64,000 nucleotides of DNA from Mantamonas sphyraenae STR306 (GCA_026936335.1 JAPMXV010000023.1:148737-212736); one strand, 5' to 3'; counted from the first letter of the stretch, positions 55,501 to 64,000 are shown. Translations and numbers: made by a program. Notes: generated by a model from the sequence alone, not told the origin.

Positions 55501-58500
55501 GCAGACGGTGGAAGACATCGACACAGTGGACCACACACTGGACGCAGAGGCACAGCGGTTGTACCTGCACACGCGTTCAGGAGCAAAGAGCAGCGGGCTG
55601 TTGGGGCTGGAGGTGAGCGCGGGAGAGGTTGCGTGGGCGATGCACAGCAAGACGTCGACGGAGCTGACGAAGCTTGTGTGTCCTGGGGAGAGTACGACGT
55701 GGGAAGATGCGCGGGGTGTGGGCCTGGTGCTGTGGAACCGAGAAGTTGTGCAGCTGCGTCGTGCGGCGGAGCAAATGGCAAACGCGGTGTTCAAGGCGAC
55801 GAAAGACCCGGACCGGTGTGCGATCTTCAACATGGCGCTGGGGCGAAAGTCGAGGCAGTTGGCGCTGTACAAGGCAGTGCAGTCGAAGAATCCGAAGCTG
55901 GTGGACTTTCTGAGCAACGACTTTCGGGAGGAGCGTTGGGCGCGGGCGGCGTGCAAGAATGGGTATGCGCTGGTGAGCAAGCACAGGTACGAGTTTGGGG
56001 CAGCGTTCTTCCTGCTGGGAGGAGACCTGAAGGGTGCAGCCAATGTGTGCATCCACAGTCTGCAGGACGTGCAGCTGGCGTACTTTCTGGCACGCGTGGT
56101 GGAAGGAGACGCAGAGGTGCAGCCTGTGACGACGATGGTGCGCGAAGAGATGCAGCGACGTGCAGAGGGTGGTAGGGATGTGTTTTTGCAGAGTGTGCTT
56201 CTGTGGCACGCGGGAGAGGCGGAAGGAGCCCTTGCGGTGCTGGAAGAGGAGGGGAGTGGGCAAAGCAAAGCGGCACGTGCGCAAGAGGTGGACGAGGAGC
56301 CCGGGGTACGGTTTGAGTGGTATCGAAGCGGAGAGGATGAAGAGGAAGAGGCTGTGCAGCAGAGCTTCAGCGAGGCGGTGTTTGCTGGGACGGTGTCGAG
56401 TGCATCGCGGGATGGGGCACGTCGGAAAAAGGGCAAGAAGAAGCGCGGGCTGGTGGGATCGGAGTCGATGTTGAGTGTGGCCAGCGGGAGCGTGGGGAGC
56501 GGGTCGAGCTCGTGGATTTCGAACGAGTGGCGTGCAAGCAAGCTGACTGTGAGGATGGAGGGACAGGAGGGAGGGCGTTCGACGCAGCACAACCCGACGA
56601 TGTATGCGTACATGCGCTACCTGCGCGGAGTGCTGGATAGGAAGGAGCTGCAAGCAGCGGCAGCTGCAGAAGGAGGGGTCGGGGTCAAGTACACGGCGCT
56701 GGAGGGCAAGGCGAACGCGGCTGTGGATGGGCAGTGTCTGCGTCGCAATGTGTATGCGTATGAGAATGGTGGGATGGTGGGTCTGGCACTGGAGCAGGTG
56801 TTGGAGTTGGAGCGCGGGCGGGTGCATGGGTTTCTTCAGCGGGGTGTTGGAGGCGGGAAAGAGGAGGGAGAGGGGGGAGAGGGGGGAGAAGGGGAGAGGA
56901 GGAGGTGGTGGGGGTGGTGGAGGAGGAAGAGGAGGAGGAGGAGGAGGAGGAGGATGAGGATTGGTATGATAGTTTTGGTGGAGGAGGGGGTGGGTTTGGA
57001 GGGGGTGGGTTTGGTGGAGGGGGTGGGTTTGGTGGAGGCGGAGGTGCTGCGGCGGCGTTGTTTGGGGGTGATGATGGAGGAGACGAGGGGGAAGGCGCGG
57101 ATGATGATGGAGAGGCGGCAGCAGTGAGTCAGGCGGAGGAAAAGGTGGACGAGGTGGAGGACAACGAGGGAGGGGGAGAGGGAGGAGAGGAGCTGTATGC
57201 ACTAGACAGGGCAGTGGTGTTGCGGTTGGCGAGGAAACAGGTGGTGGAGCTGCTGGGCGTCGGGCGCAAGACGCGTGTGCACCAGGGAGAACTGGAAGCT
57301 GTGCGGGAAACGCTGCGTGTGCTGCGAGAAGCGTACTGTGTGGAGACAAAGGAGGTGTTGGAGGACGTGTGGGCGTTTTGCGAGAGCCGGGGGTACGTGG
57401 TGGGCATGTACCTGCTGCTGTCGGTGCCGTACGTGCCTGTGAGTCTGGCAAGATTGGCCGGGAAGCAGGAGGCGTGGGTGGCGGCGCTGGGTGGGAAGGG
57501 CGCAGGGTCGAGCGCAGGCACAGGTGAGGAAGTGGCGATGAAGACGGCGCTGGTGGTGCATTTGATCGGCGAGACGGACGTGCTCGTGGAACATGCGCTT
57601 GAGGACGGGCTGCATACACACGAAGTGGAGGAGGTGCGCGTGTTTGTTCGAGAGCTGAGTGCGCTGTGGCGTGCGCTGGATGAGGGCGACGAGCTGGAGA
57701 AGCTGCCCGAGGTGGTCAGGCATGCCCTGCGCGTATCGATGTTGGTGCTTGTGTTTTTGTGCGCTTGGCAGCAAGACCACCTGCCTGTGCTTCAGGCGCT
57801 GATGGATCTGCACAACGAAGCGCTGGAGCAAGTCGGGGTGGAGGAGATCGGAAAGCTGGTGGACATGCTGGCAGACAAGGAGTGGCAAGCAACGGACGCA
57901 GCGGCGCGGGCAGCGGAGTACGACAGCGACGATGAACTGTACGACAGCGACACGGACACGGACGCATATCTGGCAATGCTGCGGGAGCGAGAGCGTGCAC
58001 GGAAGGGAAAGACGGCGCGGCGGAAGAAGAAACGCGTGGTGGCGCCGGAGTGGCGCGAGCGGATGGACGAGGTACACGCGTTTCAGGACGAACTACTGCG
58101 GGTCATGCTCGTACAGCGGTTTGTAGAGCTCGTGCGGCGAGACGGGAACCTGGATCGGATGTACGGGCAGCGACGCGAGGTGCTGGAGGAAGAGGAAGCG
58201 CGGCGACCGATCTTGGGCAGGCTGGCACAATGGTGGCACAGGGAAACGACACATGCGATTGTACGTGTGCCGCGAGAGATCGTGCAGCTTGCGTTTATGG
58301 ATGACCTGAGCGTGCACGAGCTGCACAGCGAAAAGATGGACTTGAAGTACAACGGGCTGGGGGAACGGGAGGAAGAGACGGCGGCGCGTCGGGCGCGTCT
58401 GTGGAACACGCTGATGGAGCGTCCGTCGACGTTTAGCGCCATGGCTAGCGTGGTGCTGTCGTTGGCGGCAAGTAGGGACGAGGTTCGATCCGGGTTTGTG

Positions 58501-59829
58501 TCTGCGGAAGAGGTGTACAGGCGCGAGGGAATGCCTGTGCTGGACTTTTGCGTGTCACCGCTGCCGACACTGAGCACCAAGACGCGGTACGTGGTGATCG
58601 GCACGAGCGAAGGTCTTGTGGAGATCAGCGTGCCGCTTGAGGGCGACATGGGCGACGTGGGCCAGGTGATGCGCGACCAGAGGTCGACGTCACTGGTGCC
58701 GGGCGAGGAACAACTGCACAGAGAGGTGGTGACATGGAACCCGCGGCTCACGGGGATGGCTGAAGAAGACGACGGCGAGGAGGAGAGCGTCGGGCGCAGC
58801 GGGAGCGACATGGCTCGCATCGAGATCATCGACGAGTACGAAGCGGCCAAACCGAGGCGTGCGGTGGCGACGCTGCAGCGGACGGTGAAGCGGTCAACAC
58901 AGAACAAGAGCGTGAAGCGAAGCAGAAGCAACAAGAGTGACCGTCGCAAGCGCAAGGGGTTCTCGAAGCATGCGTTCCCGGACATCCATTTTGGCGAAGA
59001 CGAAGGCGGAGCAGGGGGCGGAAGCAGCGGGACTACGAGCAACATGAGCAGGCAGTTTGAGGCGAGTGCACTGGAGGCACATCCAAACCAGCCGTTTTAC
59101 ATCAGCGGAAGCGAGGATGGCGTACAGCTGTGGCGTTTTGGCGTGGAGGAGTGCATTCGCGAGTATGTATGGGACAGCGGGCGTCTGGGAGGCGTGGGTC
59201 AGCTGGAGTTTAACGACAACGGGGACATCTTTGCCGCGACGAGTGCAGACAAGATCCAGCTGTACAAGTTTAACCGGGAAGAGGCGTTTGAAGAGATCGA
59301 AACGCACTATCGAATGATCCACGATCTGCTGTTTTTGCGCAGCAAGAGCGTGTTTGTGACGGCGGGAGAGGCTGCACGGGAGGTGTGCTTGTTTGACACG
59401 CTGCTGCCTCACAAGCGGCCGATTGTGCACAGCGGGCGGTACTTTGAGGAAGGCTCGACGGCGGTGTGCTACGTGCCGGAGCTGTACACCCTCGTGGTGG
59501 GGAGCAAGAAGGGAGGGTTGTGTGCGGTGGACGTGCGCAAGTTTGGCCGGATTCACGAGATGCACGGGGCGCACGAGGGAGCGATCGGGTGCATGCAGTA
59601 TCTGGGGGAGGGGCAATTTGCAAGCGGAGACGCAAGCGGAATGGTGAAGGTTTGGGACGTCCGGGGAAAGGCGATGGAGGTGGTGGACGAGTGGAAGGAG
59701 GAGACGCACGGCAGGAAGGGGTTTGGGTTTGGGACGCATGTGTCGGGCGTGGTGGGTGTGAGGTTGGTTGGAAATGAGGTGTATAGTGGGGTGGCGGAGG
59801 GGTATGTGGGGAGGAGGAGGAGGGTGTGA
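52519..59829 (+). CDS. DMXL: Rabconnectin-3 alpha / DMX-like / Rav1 (V-ATPase assembly factor); exons 52519-52773, 52874-59829; one-base frame break near 56895
   Basis: N-terminal WD40s (FSPDGRLIAT, FLYLRHPCSVT, NVLMST), LADYHPRLL, Rav1p_C motif FLSNDF..ERW.RAACKNGYALVSKHRYEFGAAFFLLGG, C-terminal WD40s HPNQPFYISGSEDG. Confidence 0.9.
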
Positions 59830-59931
59830 ACGGTGGCGTGGGTGGGAATGAAAAGGGTGGTTGAAGCTGCCGGATGAGGTGATGGAGAGAGTGATTGGGT
59901 GGGTGGGGAGGGGTGCGGAATGAAGGGTGGT

Positions 59932-62900
59932 TCATTCGAGGCGTTGGCGTTTGGAGGAGGAGGAGGAGGAGGAGGAGGAGGAGGAGGAGGAGGAGGAGGA
60001 AGGGTCTTTGCGCTTGGGGAGGGTGAAGGAGGGGATGGGGTAGGCGTTGACGAGTGCGGAGGTGGTGGGGCGGGTGGTGATGTGGGGTGTGATGCGGTCG
60101 ATGAGGGTGTGGAGGAGGGTGTGCAGTGTGGTGTCGTTGGGTTTGGGGTTGTCGAGCCAGGCGATCTTGAGGGAGAGGGAGGTGACGCCGCGGGTGACGG
60201 ATTTGCTGATGGCCTGTTGCACCTGCTGGTAGGTGAGTCGTGGCCTGAGGAGGCGGACAAAGAAGGCCATGTCGACAGGCGGCACGCCAACGTTGCCCAG
60301 CGCCAGGATGATGTGTCGCAGCAGGGACAGCATGCTGCCGTTGTTGATCAGCTCACGCAGTGCCTGGTGCTCGTGTGTGTGCTGATGGCGAGGGTGCTTG
60401 GCTGCACGTGCCTTCATGTGTGCCAGCAGCGTCTGGAACTCCCGCGCCGTGCAGCTGCCACGCTCGTCGCTGGGAGTTCCTGTGCTCCAGCCACTGCGCA
60501 CAGAATCAAGGCGCCATTGTTCCTTGTTTGACGTGAAGTGGTGATCGTAGTCGCATTGTGTCCAGTGTGGGTCGCTGTCGTTGTCAGCAGGGCGTCGTGC
60601 TTTCTGCAGCCACAGTTGGGTTTGCTCGTGTTCCTCCCAGCTGGTGGGGTGGGGTCTGTTGCCGAGAGTGTCCATCTCTGTCATGAGCAGGTGGAGGAGG
60701 GCGTAGTTGGGGTCATCGTGGTCGTGTGGATCTTCCAGCCAGCACACCTTCAACCCAGCCTTTGTCACACCCATGGCCAGACCAGCGTGGAGGATGGCAT
60801 TTCTACACGCCTTTTGATCCATGTCACGGCCGAGAAGGGTGAGGCAGAAGGCCATGTCGCCCTTTGAGAGGGGAATGTTGCCCAGAGCGAGCGGGATCTG
60901 TCGGACGAGCGTGTTCAGGGTGCCATGGCAGACCACAACACGCGCTTGTAGGGTCATGAGGTCGGGGATGTTGCCGATGGGATGCTCGTTGGCCAGGGTG
61001 TGCATGTTCTTCAGCAGTGCCGTGTGCTCCTTCTTGTTGCTGTGGCTGCGCTCGCTCGTGCGCCACCTCGTCCAGCCACTGCGCACAACGCCATCTGGCA
61101 GTCCATCCTCCACGGCCATCTTCTCCTTCTCTGTGGGCTCGGGCAGAACAAGCTCGGGGATGTCGAGGTTGCTGACAGCGTCGTATGTGATTGGGCGGGT
61201 GGTGATGTGGGGTGTGATGCGGTCGACGAGGGTGTGGAGGAGGGTGTGCAGTGTGGCGTCGCTGGGTTGGGGGTTGTCGAGCAAGGCGATCTTGAGGGAG
61301 AGGGAGGTGACGCCGCGTGTGAGGGTGTTGCTGATGGCACCAACCACCTGCTGGTAGGTGAGATGTGGCCTGAGGAGGCGGACAAAGAAGGCCAGGTCAA
61401 CAGGCGGCACGCCAACGTTGCCCAGCGCCAGGATGATGTGTCGCAGCAGGGACTGCTTGCTGCCGTTGTTGATCAGCGCCCGCAGTGCCTGGTTCTCGTG
61501 TGTGTGCTGATGGCGAGGATGCTTGGCTGCGCGTGCCTTCATGTGTGCCAGCAGCGTCTGAAACTCCCGTGCCGTGCAGCTGCCACGCTCGTCGCTGGGA
61601 AAGGCTCGGCTCCAGCCACTGCGCACAGACTCAGGATGCCACCTTTCCACCATGGTTGTGGTGAGGTGGTGGTCGTAGTCGCATTGTGTCCAGTGTGGGT
61701 CGCTGTCGTTGTCAGCAGGGCGTCGTGCTTTCTGCAGCCACAGTTGGGTTTGCTCGTGTTCCTCCCAGCTGGTGGGGTGGGGTCTGTTGCCGAGAGTGTC
61801 CATCTCTGTCATGAGCAGGTGGAGGAGGGCGTAGTTGGGGTCATCGTGGTCGTGTGGATCTTCCAGCCAGCACACCTTCAACCCAGCCTTTGTCACACCC
61901 GTGGCCAGACCAGCGCTGAGGATGGCACGGCTGCACGCCAATTGGTCCATATCGCGGCCGAGAAGGGTGAGGCAGAAGGCCATGTCGCCCTGGGAGAGGG
62001 GAATGTTGCCCAGAGCGAGCGGGATCTGTCGGACGAGCGTGTTCAGGGTGCCATGGCAGACCACAACACGCGCTTGCAGGGTCATGAGGTCTGGAATGTT
62101 GTCAATTGGATGCTCGTTGGCCAGAGAGTGCATGTGCTTCAGCAGTGCCGTGTGCTCCTTCTTGTTGCTGCGGCTGCGCTCGTCACTGCGCCAGTCCCGC
62201 GACCACCCTTTGCGCACAACCACATCTGGCAACTTGTTGGTCTTGTTCATGCCTGCTGACTTCCCTGCACCGATGTCTCCGTTCTTGACCCTCCTTGCCC
62301 GTGTGCTCGACGTCCCTGTCCCTGTGCCACTGCCAGCCGTGACCCTGATCCTGCTCGTTCCGCTGCCTGTCATCCTTTGTGTACCGGTACGTCGGCTGGT
62401 GTTACCTCTGCGTCGTCGCCTGCGGCCGATGCTTGTGCGTCTCGGCTGCCATTCGTCCAAGTCCTCCTGCTCCATGTTGTCTGCGTCCTCGTCGCTGTCG
62501 TCTTGCGGGTTGTACTCCTCATCCATGGCATCACCAGTGTCTGCATAGCTGAGTGGACCCCGAGTGTTCAACTCGTCGTCCACGGGCTGCTGGGTTGCGT
62601 CGTTTGCCTCGCCGTCTTCTTCATACGCCTCCATCCAAGAGCTAGTCATCCAATTTGAGTTGCTGGAGGTTGTCCGCGGTTCACGATGGCCGAAGCTCAG
62701 GAAAATCAGGTCCTCCACGTCGCCGGTGTCATGTGTGTGTGCGTCCTGATCTGCGTCGTCGTCGTTGCTGTCTCCAGTCTGCTGTGTGGCCTGGTGGGAA
62801 GAGGACGACGATGTGGTGGTGGATGTGGTCCGTGTGATACCAACAAAAGCAGGGCTGACGCGTTTGGGGACGCGGTTGCGGTTTGTGGTGGGTTGAGCAG

Positions 62901-63525
62901 GCGGAGGGTGCAACGGAGTCTGAGCAAAGTGCACCTGGGCGGTTTGTCGCGGCTGAGGAGGAGGCGGAGGAGGGTAGGCGTAGTATGGGTGGCCCTGATG
63001 AGCATACGCGTGCAGCTGCTGGGGATGGGTATTGACAGGGACCCAGATGATGGGTGGTGGTGGGTGCTGGTACTGGTTTTGTACGCCAGAGGCGGGCAGC
63101 ATGTTCGGAAATGGCTGGGCAGCCATGGGAGGGACCATGTACCCGTAGCTGTGGGGAAGACGAGAGGGGCGCGGTAGGAACGGTGAGCGGAAGGCGGAAT
63201 GGACGCCATCAGGGCAGAAGCGGGGGTGAAGGGAGGCTGGAGCGAGCAAAGAGGGAAAACGGAGGAGATTGGCAGACGCGGAAACTGGCAACGGGGAGGG
63301 CAGTGACAGGGAGGAGGGGATCGGAGAAGAGCGGAGACGACAGCAGCGGTGGTGATGGGGAAGTGGAGATGCAGGGCAGGAGTGCAGGCAAGCGACCGAG
63401 GCATGTAGGAGGCAAGGAAGCTGGAGAAGCGGGCAGTCAGAAAACGGAGTGGAAGGCAGAACGCACGCTGGGTAGGTGTTGGGAGTGTGTTGTTGCTTCG
63501 GAGTGCTTGAGTAGTCGTTGTCCAT
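59932..63525 (-). CDS. Orphan telomere-adjacent protein with four homologous ~185-aa modules; exons 63525-63467, 63148-59932
   Basis: Long open frame. In-frame 318-nt GTGCGT..CAG intron. Pro/Gln-rich and acidic N-terminus, basic RRRRRR, modules A-B-A'-B', poly-Ser and C-terminal KRQRLE. Confidence 0.75.
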   Translation of the reverse strand: MDNDYSSTPKQQHTPNTYPACVLPSTPFSDCPLLQLPCLLHASVACLHSCPASPLPHHHRCCRLRSSPIPSSLSLPSPLPVSASANLLRFPSLLAPASLHPRFCPDGVHSAFRSPFLPRPSRLPHSYGYMVPPMAAQPFPNMLPASGVQNQYQHPPPPIIWVPVNTHPQQLHAYAHQGHPYYAYPPPPPPQPRQTAQVHFAQTPLHPPPAQPTTNRNRVPKRVSPAFVGITRTTSTTTSSSSSHQATQQTGDSNDDDADQDAHTHDTGDVEDLIFLSFGHREPRTTSSNSNWMTSSWMEAYEEDGEANDATQQPVDDELNTRGPLSYADTGDAMDEEYNPQDDSDEDADNMEQEDLDEWQPRRTSIGRRRRRRGNTSRRTGTQRMTGSGTSRIRVTAGSGTGTGTSSTRARRVKNGDIGAGKSAGMNKTNKLPDVVVRKGWSRDWRSDERSRSNKKEHTALLKHMHSLANEHPIDNIPDLMTLQARVVVCHGTLNTLVRQIPLALGNIPLSQGDMAFCLTLLGRDMDQLACSRAILSAGLATGVTKAGLKVCWLEDPHDHDDPNYALLHLLMTEMDTLGNRPHPTSWEEHEQTQLWLQKARRPADNDSDPHWTQCDYDHHLTTTMVERWHPESVRSGWSRAFPSDERGSCTAREFQTLLAHMKARAAKHPRHQHTHENQALRALINNGSKQSLLRHIILALGNVGVPPVDLAFFVRLLRPHLTYQQVVGAISNTLTRGVTSLSLKIALLDNPQPSDATLHTLLHTLVDRITPHITTRPITYDAVSNLDIPELVLPEPTEKEKMAVEDGLPDGVVRSGWTRWRTSERSHSNKKEHTALLKNMHTLANEHPIGNIPDLMTLQARVVVCHGTLNTLVRQIPLALGNIPLSKGDMAFCLTLLGRDMDQKACRNAILHAGLAMGVTKAGLKVCWLEDPHDHDDPNYALLHLLMTEMDTLGNRPHPTSWEEHEQTQLWLQKARRPADNDSDPHWTQCDYDHHFTSNKEQWRLDSVRSGWSTGTPSDERGSCTAREFQTLLAHMKARAAKHPRHQHTHEHQALRELINNGSMLSLLRHIILALGNVGVPPVDMAFFVRLLRPRLTYQQVQQAISKSVTRGVTSLSLKIAWLDNPKPNDTTLHTLLHTLIDRITPHITTRPTTSALVNAYPIPSFTLPKRKDPSSSSSSSSSSSSSSSSKRQRLE
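59953..60000. repeat. (GGA)n microsatellite encoding poly-Ser on the minus strand
   Basis: About 16 perfect GGA units. Confidence 0.9.
60068..62231. repeat. Tandem direct duplication, unit about 1125-1131 bp (copies ~60068-61100 and ~61193-62231)
   Basis: Near-identical copies. For example, the ~225 bp starting at 60547 and at 61675 read identically. Confidence 0.95.
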
Positions 63526-63796
63526 GGTGATGGTGATGGTGCTGGAGTGTATGCGGATTGTGTTGGACTGGTGGAGGGTGTTGTGGGTGTTGGTGATACT
63601 TTGGTTGAAGGCGGACGGGCAGTGCTGACTGCGCGGCGTTGCAGGACGACAGCCACTCACTAGCGACATTTCCACTCCCACCCACTGCCCACTGCCCCAT
63701 GTCAACACCCAACTCAGCCACACCGCCAGCTAACACAAGCACAACTCACATGACATAGACCGGACTCATCACATCAACAAACCATGCAACTACAGA

Positions 63797-64000
63797 TTAG
63801 GGTTAGGGTTAGGGTTAGGGTTAGGGTTAGGGTTAGGGTTAGGGTTAGGATTAGGGTTAGGGTTAGGGTTAGGGTTAGGGTTAGGGTTAGGGTTAGGGTT
63901 AGGGTTAGGGTTAGGGTTAGGGTTAGGGTTAGGGTTAGGGTTAGGGTTAGGGTTAGGGTTAGGGTTAGGGTTAAGGGTTAGGGTTAGGTTAGGGTTAGGG
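63797..64000 (+). repeat. Telomeric (TTAGGG)n array, chromosome end
   Basis: About 33 TTAGGG units running to the window end, with rare variants (TTAGGA, TTAAGGG, TTAGG). Confidence 0.98.

What the first reader, a model, noticed from the sequence alone, without database searches (positions are those of the whole stretch)
59932..63525. Last gene on the chromosome: orphan protein of four homologous modules (A-B-A'-B') of an unrecognised domain
Seen: an ancient duplication (A vs B) nested inside a recent ~1.13 kb duplication (AB vs A'B'). All four modules share VRxGW[ST]...S[DE]R.S...E..[TA]LL.[HN]M...A..HP...L[VL]R.I.LALGN....D[ML]AF...LL...AI......GVT...LK[VI]..L..P....LLH.L. The N-terminus is Pro/Gln-rich then acidic with RRRRRR, and the protein ends in KRQRLE. 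I recognise no known family. Inference: NLS-like motifs, a low-complexity activation-like region and tandem helical modules suggest a nuclear nucleic-acid-binding protein, possibly a subtelomeric multigene family or a telomere-associated element.
Basis: partly seen in the sequence, partly recalled or inferred. Interest (0 to 1): 0.8.

Follow-up and report, generated by a model that had tools for sequence, protein, structure and literature searches.

The report
Hypervariable winged-helix gene capping telomeres
The last gene before this telomere is one of about 160 copies of an undescribed gene that sits at nearly every chromosome end of the protist Mantamonas sphyraenae; it encodes a chain of four winged-helix modules that vary mainly on the helix that normally reads DNA, so the family may be a home-grown set of DNA readers, though binding is untested.

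Summary
The ORF and its four modules (A-B-A'-B') are real. A and B are homologous (37% identity, E 3e-22). Three points need correcting.

1. The gene has no relatives in other organisms, but it is not single-copy. Its start motif occurs 162 times in this 25-Mb genome, 81 on each strand. The genome is the Mantamonas sphyraenae assembly. Copies lie at about 110 contig ends and always point away from the telomere.
2. The conserved start is MVPPMAAQPF (window 63138).
3. The AB/A'B' repeat is family-wide and not recent. All A modules are 87-90% alike whatever their gene or position.

AlphaFold2 gives a confident module (pLDDT 91.7) with canonical winged-helix topology. All 50 best structural matches are winged-helix DNA binders, but only at Z 5-6.2. 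No sequence search found relatives among 1.84 billion representative proteins, Pfam, PDB, metagenome or viral contigs.

Variation concentrates in three patches, one being the exposed face of helix 3. These patches change 3-6 times faster than the gene-wide synonymous rate. Copies are recombination mosaics.

DNA binding, nuclear location and expression are inferred, not shown. The scan found this family before on other DNA of the same genome.

The parts
63797..64000 (+). Telomere array, 34 x TTAGGG, running to the window (contig) end
63768..63796 (.). About 30 nt between the telomere repeats and the conserved leader; it differs at every chromosome end compared
   Evidence: alignment of 18 ends
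63620..63767 (-). Terminal-only conserved segment (about 150 nt). It is present in the telomere-adjacent copies examined and absent from the inner tandem copies examined, whose leader starts at position 178
63139..63619 (-). Conserved leader shared by all copies (column conservation 0.91-0.98). The indel pattern and inconsistent frames say it is non-coding; it is the presumed promoter / 5' UTR (inferred)
59932..63138 (-). Conserved coding sequence, MVPPMAAQPF...KRQRLE, 1068 residues plus stop. Intact, and within the family's canonical length of 1054-1070 aa
62233..63138 (-). N-terminal low-complexity region: P/Q-rich (pI 10.3), Ser/Thr plus acidic (pI 4.05), then Arg-rich with RRRRRR (pI 12). 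It is the least conserved part of the unit (median 81-85% identity at 62600-62100)
61791..62223 (-). Module A1 (near-neutral, pI 6.2). Winged-helix core at module residues about 55-125
61915..61944 (-). Helix 3 of A1 (QLACSRAILS). Hypervariable at module positions 95, 98, 99, 102, 103; conserved at 96, 97, 100, 101, 104
61206..61632 (-). Module B1 (basic, pI 11.1), same topology as A
61324..61356 (-). Helix 3 of B1 (YQQVVGAISNT), hypervariable face
60663..61092 (-). Module A2 (pI 7.3)
60081..60507 (-). Module B2 (pI 10.8)
59935..60080 (-). C-terminal tail PKRKD-(Ser)16-KRQRLE (NLS-like, inferred). The poly-Ser is a (GGA)16 microsatellite at 59953-60000 on the + strand, and its length differs between copies
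59805..59931 (-). About 125 nt of conserved 3' flank. Family homology ends here, about 25 nt from the stop of the convergent WD40 gene (56905-59829, +)

Best explanation
This is one intact copy of a unit of about 3.85-3.9 kb. One to three tandem copies of the unit cap nearly every chromosome end of Mantamonas sphyraenae.

Shown:
- Each unit holds one gene that reads away from the telomere.
- The protein has a disordered N-terminus (P/Q-rich, then acidic, then Arg-rich) followed by alternating A (neutral) and B (basic) modules.
- The scaffold of the modules is under purifying selection.
- Three small patches per module change several times faster than synonymous sites.
- Copies are mosaics made by recombination.

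Predicted:
- Each module folds as a winged helix with extra N- and C-terminal elements.
- The modules are joined by flexible linkers.
- One variable patch is the exposed face of helix 3, the recognition helix of winged-helix proteins.

Inferred:
- The protein enters the nucleus through its Arg/Lys clusters.
- Each module reads a few base pairs through helix 3 and the wing, so the array recognises a composite DNA site.
- The family of about 160 members is a repertoire of sequence readers. It is diversified by selection on the contact residues and shuffled by ectopic gene conversion and unequal crossing-over, which the subtelomeric position favours.
- This works like KRAB zinc-finger genes. Plausible uses are control of mobile or foreign DNA, or marking of chromosome ends.
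For: Family and position:
- 81 protein matches at 82-86% identity, none with internal stops, almost all 1.7-2 kb from contig ends, + at left ends and - at right ends. More ends appear.
- The 32-nt start motif occurs 81 times forward and 81 times reverse; the reversed control gives 0.
- The leader is conserved and homology stops just after the stop codon.

Fold:
- AF2 module: pLDDT 91.7, pTM 0.85, topology H60-70 / b76-77 / H78-87 / H94-103 / b107-111 / b115-119.
- The B module has the same topology. The AB linker is disordered and pTM is 0.49.
- All 50 top VIA matches are winged-helix domains (Hop2, MarR, Fur, MecI, ORC/Cdc6, Z-alpha, FOXM1): Z 5.0-6.2, many at rmsd 1.5-3.6 A over 57-83 residues, the longer MarR/SmtB-type alignments at up to 9 A.
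- Foldseek and Atlas hits are of the same class.

Selection:
- Scaffold pN/pS is 0.32 (A) and 0.50 (B).
- Patch columns have dN(site)/dS(gene) of 3-6, with 50-87 replacements per column on trees of 72 (A) and 76 (B) modules. The site-wise binomial test gives p of 1e-4 to 5e-3 at A99, B62, B63, B101 and B105.
- In helix 3, positions 96/97/100/101/104 are conserved A/C/A/I/A and positions 95/98/99/102/103 vary, which marks one exposed face.
- 67-78% of residues on that face are R/K/H/N/Q/S/T, and acidic residues are few (counted).
- B modules have pI about 11.

Recombination:
- Neighbouring informative sites are more compatible than in 1000 of 1000 permutations (z -5.2), and 36% of site pairs fail the four-gamete test.
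- The nearest paralogue changes in every 200-nt window.
- Genes with 2, 4 or 6 modules exist.
Against: - No binding, localisation or expression data. No RNA run was listed.
- Structural Z scores are middling (at most 6.2) and Foldseek E is 0.05 or worse. The fold call rests on topology and on the uniform class of the hits.
- There is no sequence-profile link to any winged-helix family.
- Many eukaryotic winged helices bind proteins, not DNA.
- A modules are near neutral (pI 6.2-7.3).
- Some hypervariable positions carry many hydrophobic residues or proline (A99 L/A/F; A102 P/L/I).
- Synonymous divergence is also doubled inside the patches, so patch pN/pS against the patch's own pS is only 1.24-1.32. 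A focal mutation or micro-conversion process could add to the variability.
- I could not see model coordinates, so exposure and the spatial clustering of the three patches are inferred from helical periodicity only.
Confidence: 0.55

Rival explanations
1. The winged-helix modules are protein-binding or other ligand-binding scaffolds, as in cullin, ESCRT-II, RPA32 or Stn1 winged helices. The family would then be a diversifying intracellular recognition repertoire, for example against viral or parasite proteins, and not a set of DNA readers.
For: - Hydrophobic and proline residues are common at several hypervariable sites (A99, A102, B63, B101).
- A modules are not basic.
- No sequence link to any DNA-binding winged-helix family.
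- The fold alone does not show function (note).
Against: - The variable face is exactly helix 3 of the winged-helix motif and is dominated by Q/H/N/K/R/S.
- B modules have pI about 11, and an Arg-rich segment precedes the array.
- The layout (acidic low-complexity N-terminus, basic clusters, tandem binding modules) is that of a transcription-factor-like nuclear protein (inference).
Confidence: 0.2
2. This is a Y'-like subtelomeric repeat. The unit persists and spreads because chromosome ends recombine. Its ORF is kept for a role in the unit's own maintenance or in telomere or end protection. The patch variability would then be a by-product of recombination-linked mutation and not of selection for new specificities.
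For: - One to three head-to-tail copies at ends, a sharp unit boundary and pervasive recombination.
- Synonymous divergence is also raised in the patches.
- The 32-nt start motif is identical in at least 100 copies although modules are only about 88-90% alike, which points to strong homogenisation.
Against: - The scaffold is under purifying selection (pN/pS 0.32-0.5), and 16 of 21 sampled telomere-adjacent copies are intact at about 16-19% synonymous divergence.
- Variability is confined to the same few columns in both A and B modules and follows helical periodicity. A mutational by-product does not predict this.
- There is no helicase or other enzymatic domain.
Confidence: 0.15
3. This is a telomere-specific retrotransposon or its gag-like partner (HeT-A/TART, TRAS/SART type), and the ORF is an element protein.
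For: - The 5' end faces the chromosome end and arrays are head-to-tail, as in HeT-A (own knowledge of that family).
- The published repeat analysis left most repeats unclassified (PMC10492846).
Against: - No reverse transcriptase, endonuclease, integrase or gag domain in Pfam.
- No poly(A) or A-rich tract at unit 3' ends or at tandem junctions, and no interstitial telomere repeats.
- Canonical TTAGGG repeats cap every end.
- Copies are about 10% diverged with no young near-identical subfamily.
Confidence: 0.03

Closest known systems
Winged-helix (wHTH) DNA-binding domains, e.g. MarR/Fur/ArsR-SmtB/BlaI-MecI repressors, the Hop2 winged helix, the ORC/Cdc6 C-terminal winged helix
   Same: - Same H1-S1-H2-H3-S2-wing-S3 topology.
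- Core superposes on these domains at Z 5-6.2; many matches have rmsd 1.5-3.6 A over about 60-80 residues.
- The variable residues sit on H3, the helix that these proteins place in the major groove (established knowledge of the fold).
   Different: - No sequence-profile similarity to any of them.
- Each module adds an N-terminal strand, two helices and a C-terminal helix that do not superpose well on MarR (rmsd 6-8 A when included).
- Modules are chained 2-6 per polypeptide and do not act as homodimers.
- DNA binding is untested.
KRAB/C2H2 zinc-finger gene clusters of vertebrates
   Same: Works alike (inference):
- tandem small DNA-reading modules in one protein;
- constant scaffold with hypervariable helix positions evolving faster than neutral;
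- large, clustered, fast-turning-over gene family with module-number changes.
   Different: - Unrelated fold with no zinc ligands.
- About 145-residue modules on disordered linkers, not 28-residue fingers.
- Strictly chromosome-end location.
- An acidic/PQ N-terminus in place of KRAB.
Yeast Y' elements and fungal telomere-linked helicase (TLH) genes
   Same: - A conserved unit of several kb directly inside the telomere repeats at most chromosome ends.
- Sometimes in short tandem arrays.
- Holds one long ORF and is homogenised by recombination between ends.
   Different: - The ORF encodes winged-helix arrays, not a helicase.
- No interstitial telomere repeats between tandem units.
- Focal hypervariability in the protein.
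TALE / RipTAL / Bat repeat proteins
   Same: A possible modular code: repeated modules with a fixed frame and a few specificity positions.
   Different: - Different fold and module size.
- Several variable positions in three patches, not one di-residue.
- No evidence of a one-module-one-base rule.
- An endogenous eukaryotic gene family, not secreted bacterial effectors.

Membership tests
Winged-helix (wHTH) fold superfamily | Canonical order H1-S1-H2-turn-H3-S2-wing-S3 | tested here: met
   The AF2 model (pLDDT 91.7) has H60-70, b76-77, H78-87, H94-103, b107-111 and b115-119. The B module has the same order. This is a prediction, not a solved structure.
Winged-helix (wHTH) fold superfamily | Structural superposition on solved winged-helix domains, clearly above other folds | tested here: inconclusive
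   All 50 best of 48,161 chains are winged helices, but Z is only 5.0-6.2. Foldseek E is 0.05 or worse. Atlas TM is 0.35-0.42. The hit class is uniform, but the scores are in the range the tool calls middling.
Winged-helix (wHTH) fold superfamily | Sequence-profile match to a described winged-helix family (Pfam, PDB, NCBIfam) | tested here: not met
   No Pfam family at E up to 1 in 28 modules apart from scattered chance hits. The PDB profile search gives only E 0.74 to a universal stress protein. NCBIfam gives none.
Winged-helix (wHTH) fold superfamily | Nucleic-acid binding through H3 and the wing | not testable with these tools
   Only indirect evidence: a polar/basic variable H3 face, conserved K116 in the wing and R65 in H1, and basic B modules.
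MarR family | N- and C-terminal helices forming a dimer interface around the winged-helix motif; Pfam MarR match | tested here: not met
   No MarR Pfam hit. Alignments that include the flanking helices have rmsd 6-8 A.
Forkhead / other eukaryotic winged-helix transcription factor families | Pfam Forkhead, RFX, ETS, HSF or E2F signature | tested here: not met
   None reported by Pfam. FOXM1 is only rank 45 of the structural hits, at 1% identity.
Y'-type subtelomeric element | Unit directly inside the telomere at many ends, sometimes in tandem | tested here: met
Y'-type subtelomeric element | Helicase ORF; telomere repeats between tandem units | tested here: not met
   No helicase domain. No interstitial repeats.
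Telomeric non-LTR retrotransposons (HeT-A/TART, TRAS/SART) | Reverse transcriptase or gag ORF; poly(A) at the centromere-proximal end of each unit | tested here: not met
   No such domains. Unit 3' ends are C-rich without A runs.
FEN1/XPG-nuclease-fused relatives (lead from earlier scan notes) | Pfam XPG_N / XPG_I signature in the giant internal relatives on contigs C29 and C75 | tested here: not met
   Own-genome searches with PF00752 and PF00867 hit only C21, C30, C32, C34 and C52, not C29 or C75. A fold-level likeness could not be tested because those sequences could no longer be fetched.

The most novel reading that the evidence does not exclude
Mantamonas has evolved its own modular, re-targetable DNA-reading system. 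It consists of chains of winged-helix modules whose specificity is set by a handful of hypervariable residues on helix 3 and two nearby patches. About 160 variants are kept and shuffled at the chromosome ends. Possible uses are genome defence (zinc-finger-like) or chromosome-end or chromosome-identity marking in a nucleus with about 66 small chromosomes. It would be a fourth natural kind of programmable DNA reader, beside zinc fingers, TALEs and guide-RNA systems.
Probability: 0.3. Interest if true: 0.9.

Novelty: new variant of a known kind. Interest (0 to 1): 0.7.

Why it matters
If the modules do read DNA, this is an undescribed way of building a large repertoire of sequence-specific proteins. 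It uses one of the commonest DNA-binding folds, in a lineage (CRuMs) near the base of Amorphea.

It would also be a clear case of subtelomeres serving as a diversification workshop for nuclear proteins, where the known examples are surface antigens.

There is a practical point too. The family takes up about 2.5% of the genome (162 x 3.9 kb). It may be missing from the public protein sets I searched because repeats were masked before gene calling (PMC10492846). Proteome-based comparisons of this reference species would then miss it.

The module is small, folds confidently in prediction and has a defined variable surface, so the recognition question can be tested directly in vitro.

Tried and rejected
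- Pfam, NCBIfam and PDB sequence searches of the whole protein, of 28 modules and of a divergent paralogue found nothing meaningful.
- A profile of 28 modules against 1.84 billion representatives gave one hit, P0001. It is an F-box-like protein with an artefactual 10-fold repeat that matches 25 profile positions, so I rejected it as spurious.
- ESM Atlas search by features gave no usable hit.
- Metagenome and viral contig scans gave pattern matches but no tblastn relative.
- RNA evidence: no run was listed. I kept the telomere repeat out of that query.
The right ends were therefore sampled only through the 5.1-kb loci. The giant relatives on C29 and C75 could not be read beyond L025.
- An exon-1-plus-intron model for the leader: neither built nor tested, because no RNA was available.
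- A recent within-gene duplication: rejected.
- The retrotransposon reading: rejected.
- A fixed A-B pseudo-dimer arrangement: not supported (pTM 0.49, disordered linker).
- The first PHI-like run had an integer overflow. It was redone.
Full report
**What is at the locus**

The window ends in 34 TTAGGG repeats at 63797-64000. On the minus strand, an open frame runs from near the telomere to a stop at 59932-59934. The next gene inward is a convergent WD40 protein at 56905-59829. So this is indeed the last gene on the chromosome.

The four modules start at reader residues 437, 634, 814 and 1009. A1 and A2 are 90% identical. A and B are 36-37% identical with BLASTP E 3e-22. The DNA repeat spacing is 1125-1128 nt.

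**Which organism**

The window is contig 23 of a genome of 25,061,354 bases in 78 contigs. The published Mantamonas sphyraenae FALCON assembly has exactly these figures: 25.06 Mb, 78 contigs, 59.19% GC, and TTAGGG at both ends of 59 contigs and at one end of 14 (PMC10492846). The name first reached me through earlier scan notes, and I checked it against the paper. The paper does not mention this family. It does state that repeats were masked before gene prediction.

**Not a single gene but a chromosome-end family**

- The module region finds 81 matches in the genome at 82-86% protein identity. None has an internal stop. Nearly all lie 1.7-2 kb from contig ends, on the + strand at left ends and the - strand at right ends.
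- A second search adds further ends.
- A 32-nt motif over the conserved start codon occurs 81 times forward and 81 times reverse, against 0 for the reversed control. At least 100 of these are exact matches.
- Merging the three lists gives about 56 left ends and about 54 right ends of the 156 contig ends. Right-end status was checked against known contig lengths for 17 of them. These counts are lower bounds.
- Every copy points away from its telomere.
- Some ends carry two or three head-to-tail copies about 3.85 kb apart. The left end of this same contig is an example.

**Unit anatomy**

I aligned 18 ends.
- About 30 nt next to the telomere repeats differ at every end.
- After that, about 640 nt are conserved at 0.91-0.98 per column.
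- The inner tandem copies examined lack the first 157 nt or so of this leader. There are no telomere repeats between copies.
- Homology to other copies ends about 125 nt after the stop codon.
- Unit ends are C-rich with no A run.

**Start codon**

- In 10 of 18 ends an in-frame stop lies 25 codons upstream of MVPPMAAQPF.
- The leader carries 1-nt and 5-nt indels.
- This copy alone lacks 5 nt that the other 17 ends have.
- In other copies the frame from that ATG stands in phase 0, 1 or 2 and runs for 29 to 274 codons.

I therefore place the start at 63138, which gives 1068 residues. Twenty intact paralogues measure 1054-1070 aa. An upstream exon joined by an intron cannot be excluded.

**Fold**

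An alignment of 28 modules (A, B, and four divergent ones from a neighbouring giant gene on contig 75) gave an AlphaFold2 model with pLDDT 91.7 and pTM 0.85. Its elements are:
- strand 2-5
- helices 21-37 and 45-57
- H60-70, b76-77, H78-87, H94-103, hairpin 107-111/115-119
- helix 131-143

The middle part is the textbook winged-helix order.

An exhaustive structural comparison with 48,161 solved chains returned winged-helix domains in all 50 top places. These include the Hop2 winged helix, MarR, Fur, MecI, ORC/Cdc6, Z-alpha and FOXM1. Z is 5.0-6.2. Many rows superpose at rmsd 1.5-3.6 A over 57-83 residues spanning about model residues 55-125, while the longer MarR/SmtB-type alignments run up to 9 A. 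Foldseek against the PDB and the ESM Atlas gave the same class with weak scores. The scores are middling, which is usual for a 65-residue domain (my knowledge). I therefore count the topology as met and the superposition as suggestive.

The A-B pair model keeps both modules but not their mutual position (pLDDT 76.6, pTM 0.49, linker 171-198 below pLDDT 50). The modules are thus probably beads on a string.

**No relatives by sequence**

- Pfam, NCBIfam and PDB profile searches were empty.
- The module profile against 1.84 billion representative proteins gave one spurious hit.
- That library did not return the family's own members either, so the family is absent from those public protein sets.
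- Metagenome and viral contig scans found none.

**Variation**

I used 72 distinct A modules and 76 distinct B modules.
- Overall pS is 0.16-0.19 and pN/pS is 0.5-0.7.
- Without the variable columns, pN/pS falls to 0.32 (A) and 0.50 (B).
- Variability is focal, in three patches:
  - the loop after the invariant Trp (columns 8-15);
  - the N-cap of H1 (A 60-61, B 62-63);
  - helix 3 (A 95, 98, 99, 102, 103; B 97, 98, 100, 101, 104, 105).
- On a tree, these columns take 30-87 replacements each. That is 3-6 times the gene-wide synonymous rate. Site-wise binomial p is 1e-4 to 5e-3 at five of them.
- In helix 3, the conserved A96-C97, A100-I101 and A104 alternate with the variable positions, which marks one buried and one exposed face.
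- The exposed face is 67% (A) and 78% (B) R/K/H/N/Q/S/T, counted.

Caveat: synonymous divergence is doubled within the patches, so patch pN/pS against the patch's own pS is only 1.24-1.32. This could come from whole-codon replacements, from old alleles kept by selection, or from a focal mutational process.

**Recombination**

- First and second modules of a gene are no closer to each other than to modules of other genes.
- The best-matching paralogue changes in each 200-nt window, at 88-95% identity and with no long identical tract.
- In 20 intact genes, 36% of informative site pairs fail the four-gamete test. Neighbouring sites are more compatible than in all 1000 permutations, z -5.2.
- Genes with 2, 4 or 6 modules occur.
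- Of 21 fully sampled telomere-adjacent copies, 16 are intact and 5 are truncated or frame-shifted.

**Reading**

The most likely account is a nuclear protein with an array of winged-helix readers. It belongs to a repertoire that is diversified at the contact residues and shuffled between chromosome ends. It works like KRAB zinc-finger families but is built on another fold.

The family, its architecture, the selection pattern and the mosaicism are shown. The fold is predicted. DNA binding, nuclear import and the biological use are inferred.

The rivals are a protein-binding repertoire, a Y'-like repeat with a maintenance function, and a telomeric retroelement. The last is nearly excluded.

**Relation to earlier scan notes**

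The scan has reported this family many times on other contigs. My tests agree on the family, the 3.85-kb unit and the variable helix face. They disagree with one note that found the winged-helix fold unsupported. They do not confirm, at Pfam level, the FEN1/XPG domain reported for the giant internal relatives: XPG_N and XPG_I hit only five other loci. I could not read those genes.

**Limits**

- No read data could be laid.

Noticed in passing
L025:3616-7000 (contig C75, left end, just inside the family gene): A giant open frame (3232 aa) begins right after the family gene. It holds at least five much more divergent modules of the same kind, 20-27% identical to A (BLASTP E 5e-05). Pfam finds nothing in its first 829 residues.
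   Followed up: partly
G000 contig C29, about 75-104 kb (not in the window): An internal cluster of family-like genes with very long open frames (1902, 2172 and 3224 aa), + strand first and then - strand. This is the opposite of what a telomere-to-telomere fusion would leave. Pfam XPG_N and XPG_I do not hit there.
   Followed up: partly
window 26000-64000, and L021-L040: The strand that runs 5'->3' toward the telomere is strongly G-over-C rich. Skew is +0.2 to +0.45 here and is mirrored at -0.21 to -0.25 at 20 left ends. It holds whatever the orientation of the ORFs, so the family gene's sense strand is C-rich.
   Followed up: partly
window about 63160-63165 (leader, about 25 nt upstream of ATG 63138): This copy alone lacks 5 nt (TGCCC) that are present in all 17 other leaders compared.
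   Followed up: yes
window 63107-63138 and 161 other places in the genome: The 32 nt at the start codon are identical in at least 100 copies, although the modules are only about 88-90% alike and synonymous sites differ by 16-19%. This stretch seems to be under unusually strong constraint or homogenisation.
   Followed up: no
window 63768-63796: The roughly 30 nt between the telomere repeats and the conserved leader differ at every chromosome end compared. They could be end-specific tags or just ragged junctions.
   Followed up: no
window 59953-60000: A perfect (GGA)16 microsatellite encodes the poly-Ser run before KRQRLE. Run length ranges from about 6 to 19 or more Ser between copies.
   Followed up: partly
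window 60982-62259 (+) and other long antisense ORFs: Long open frames lie antisense to the gene (up to 425 aa). This is usual in 60% GC DNA, and there is no sign that they are coding.
   Followed up: no
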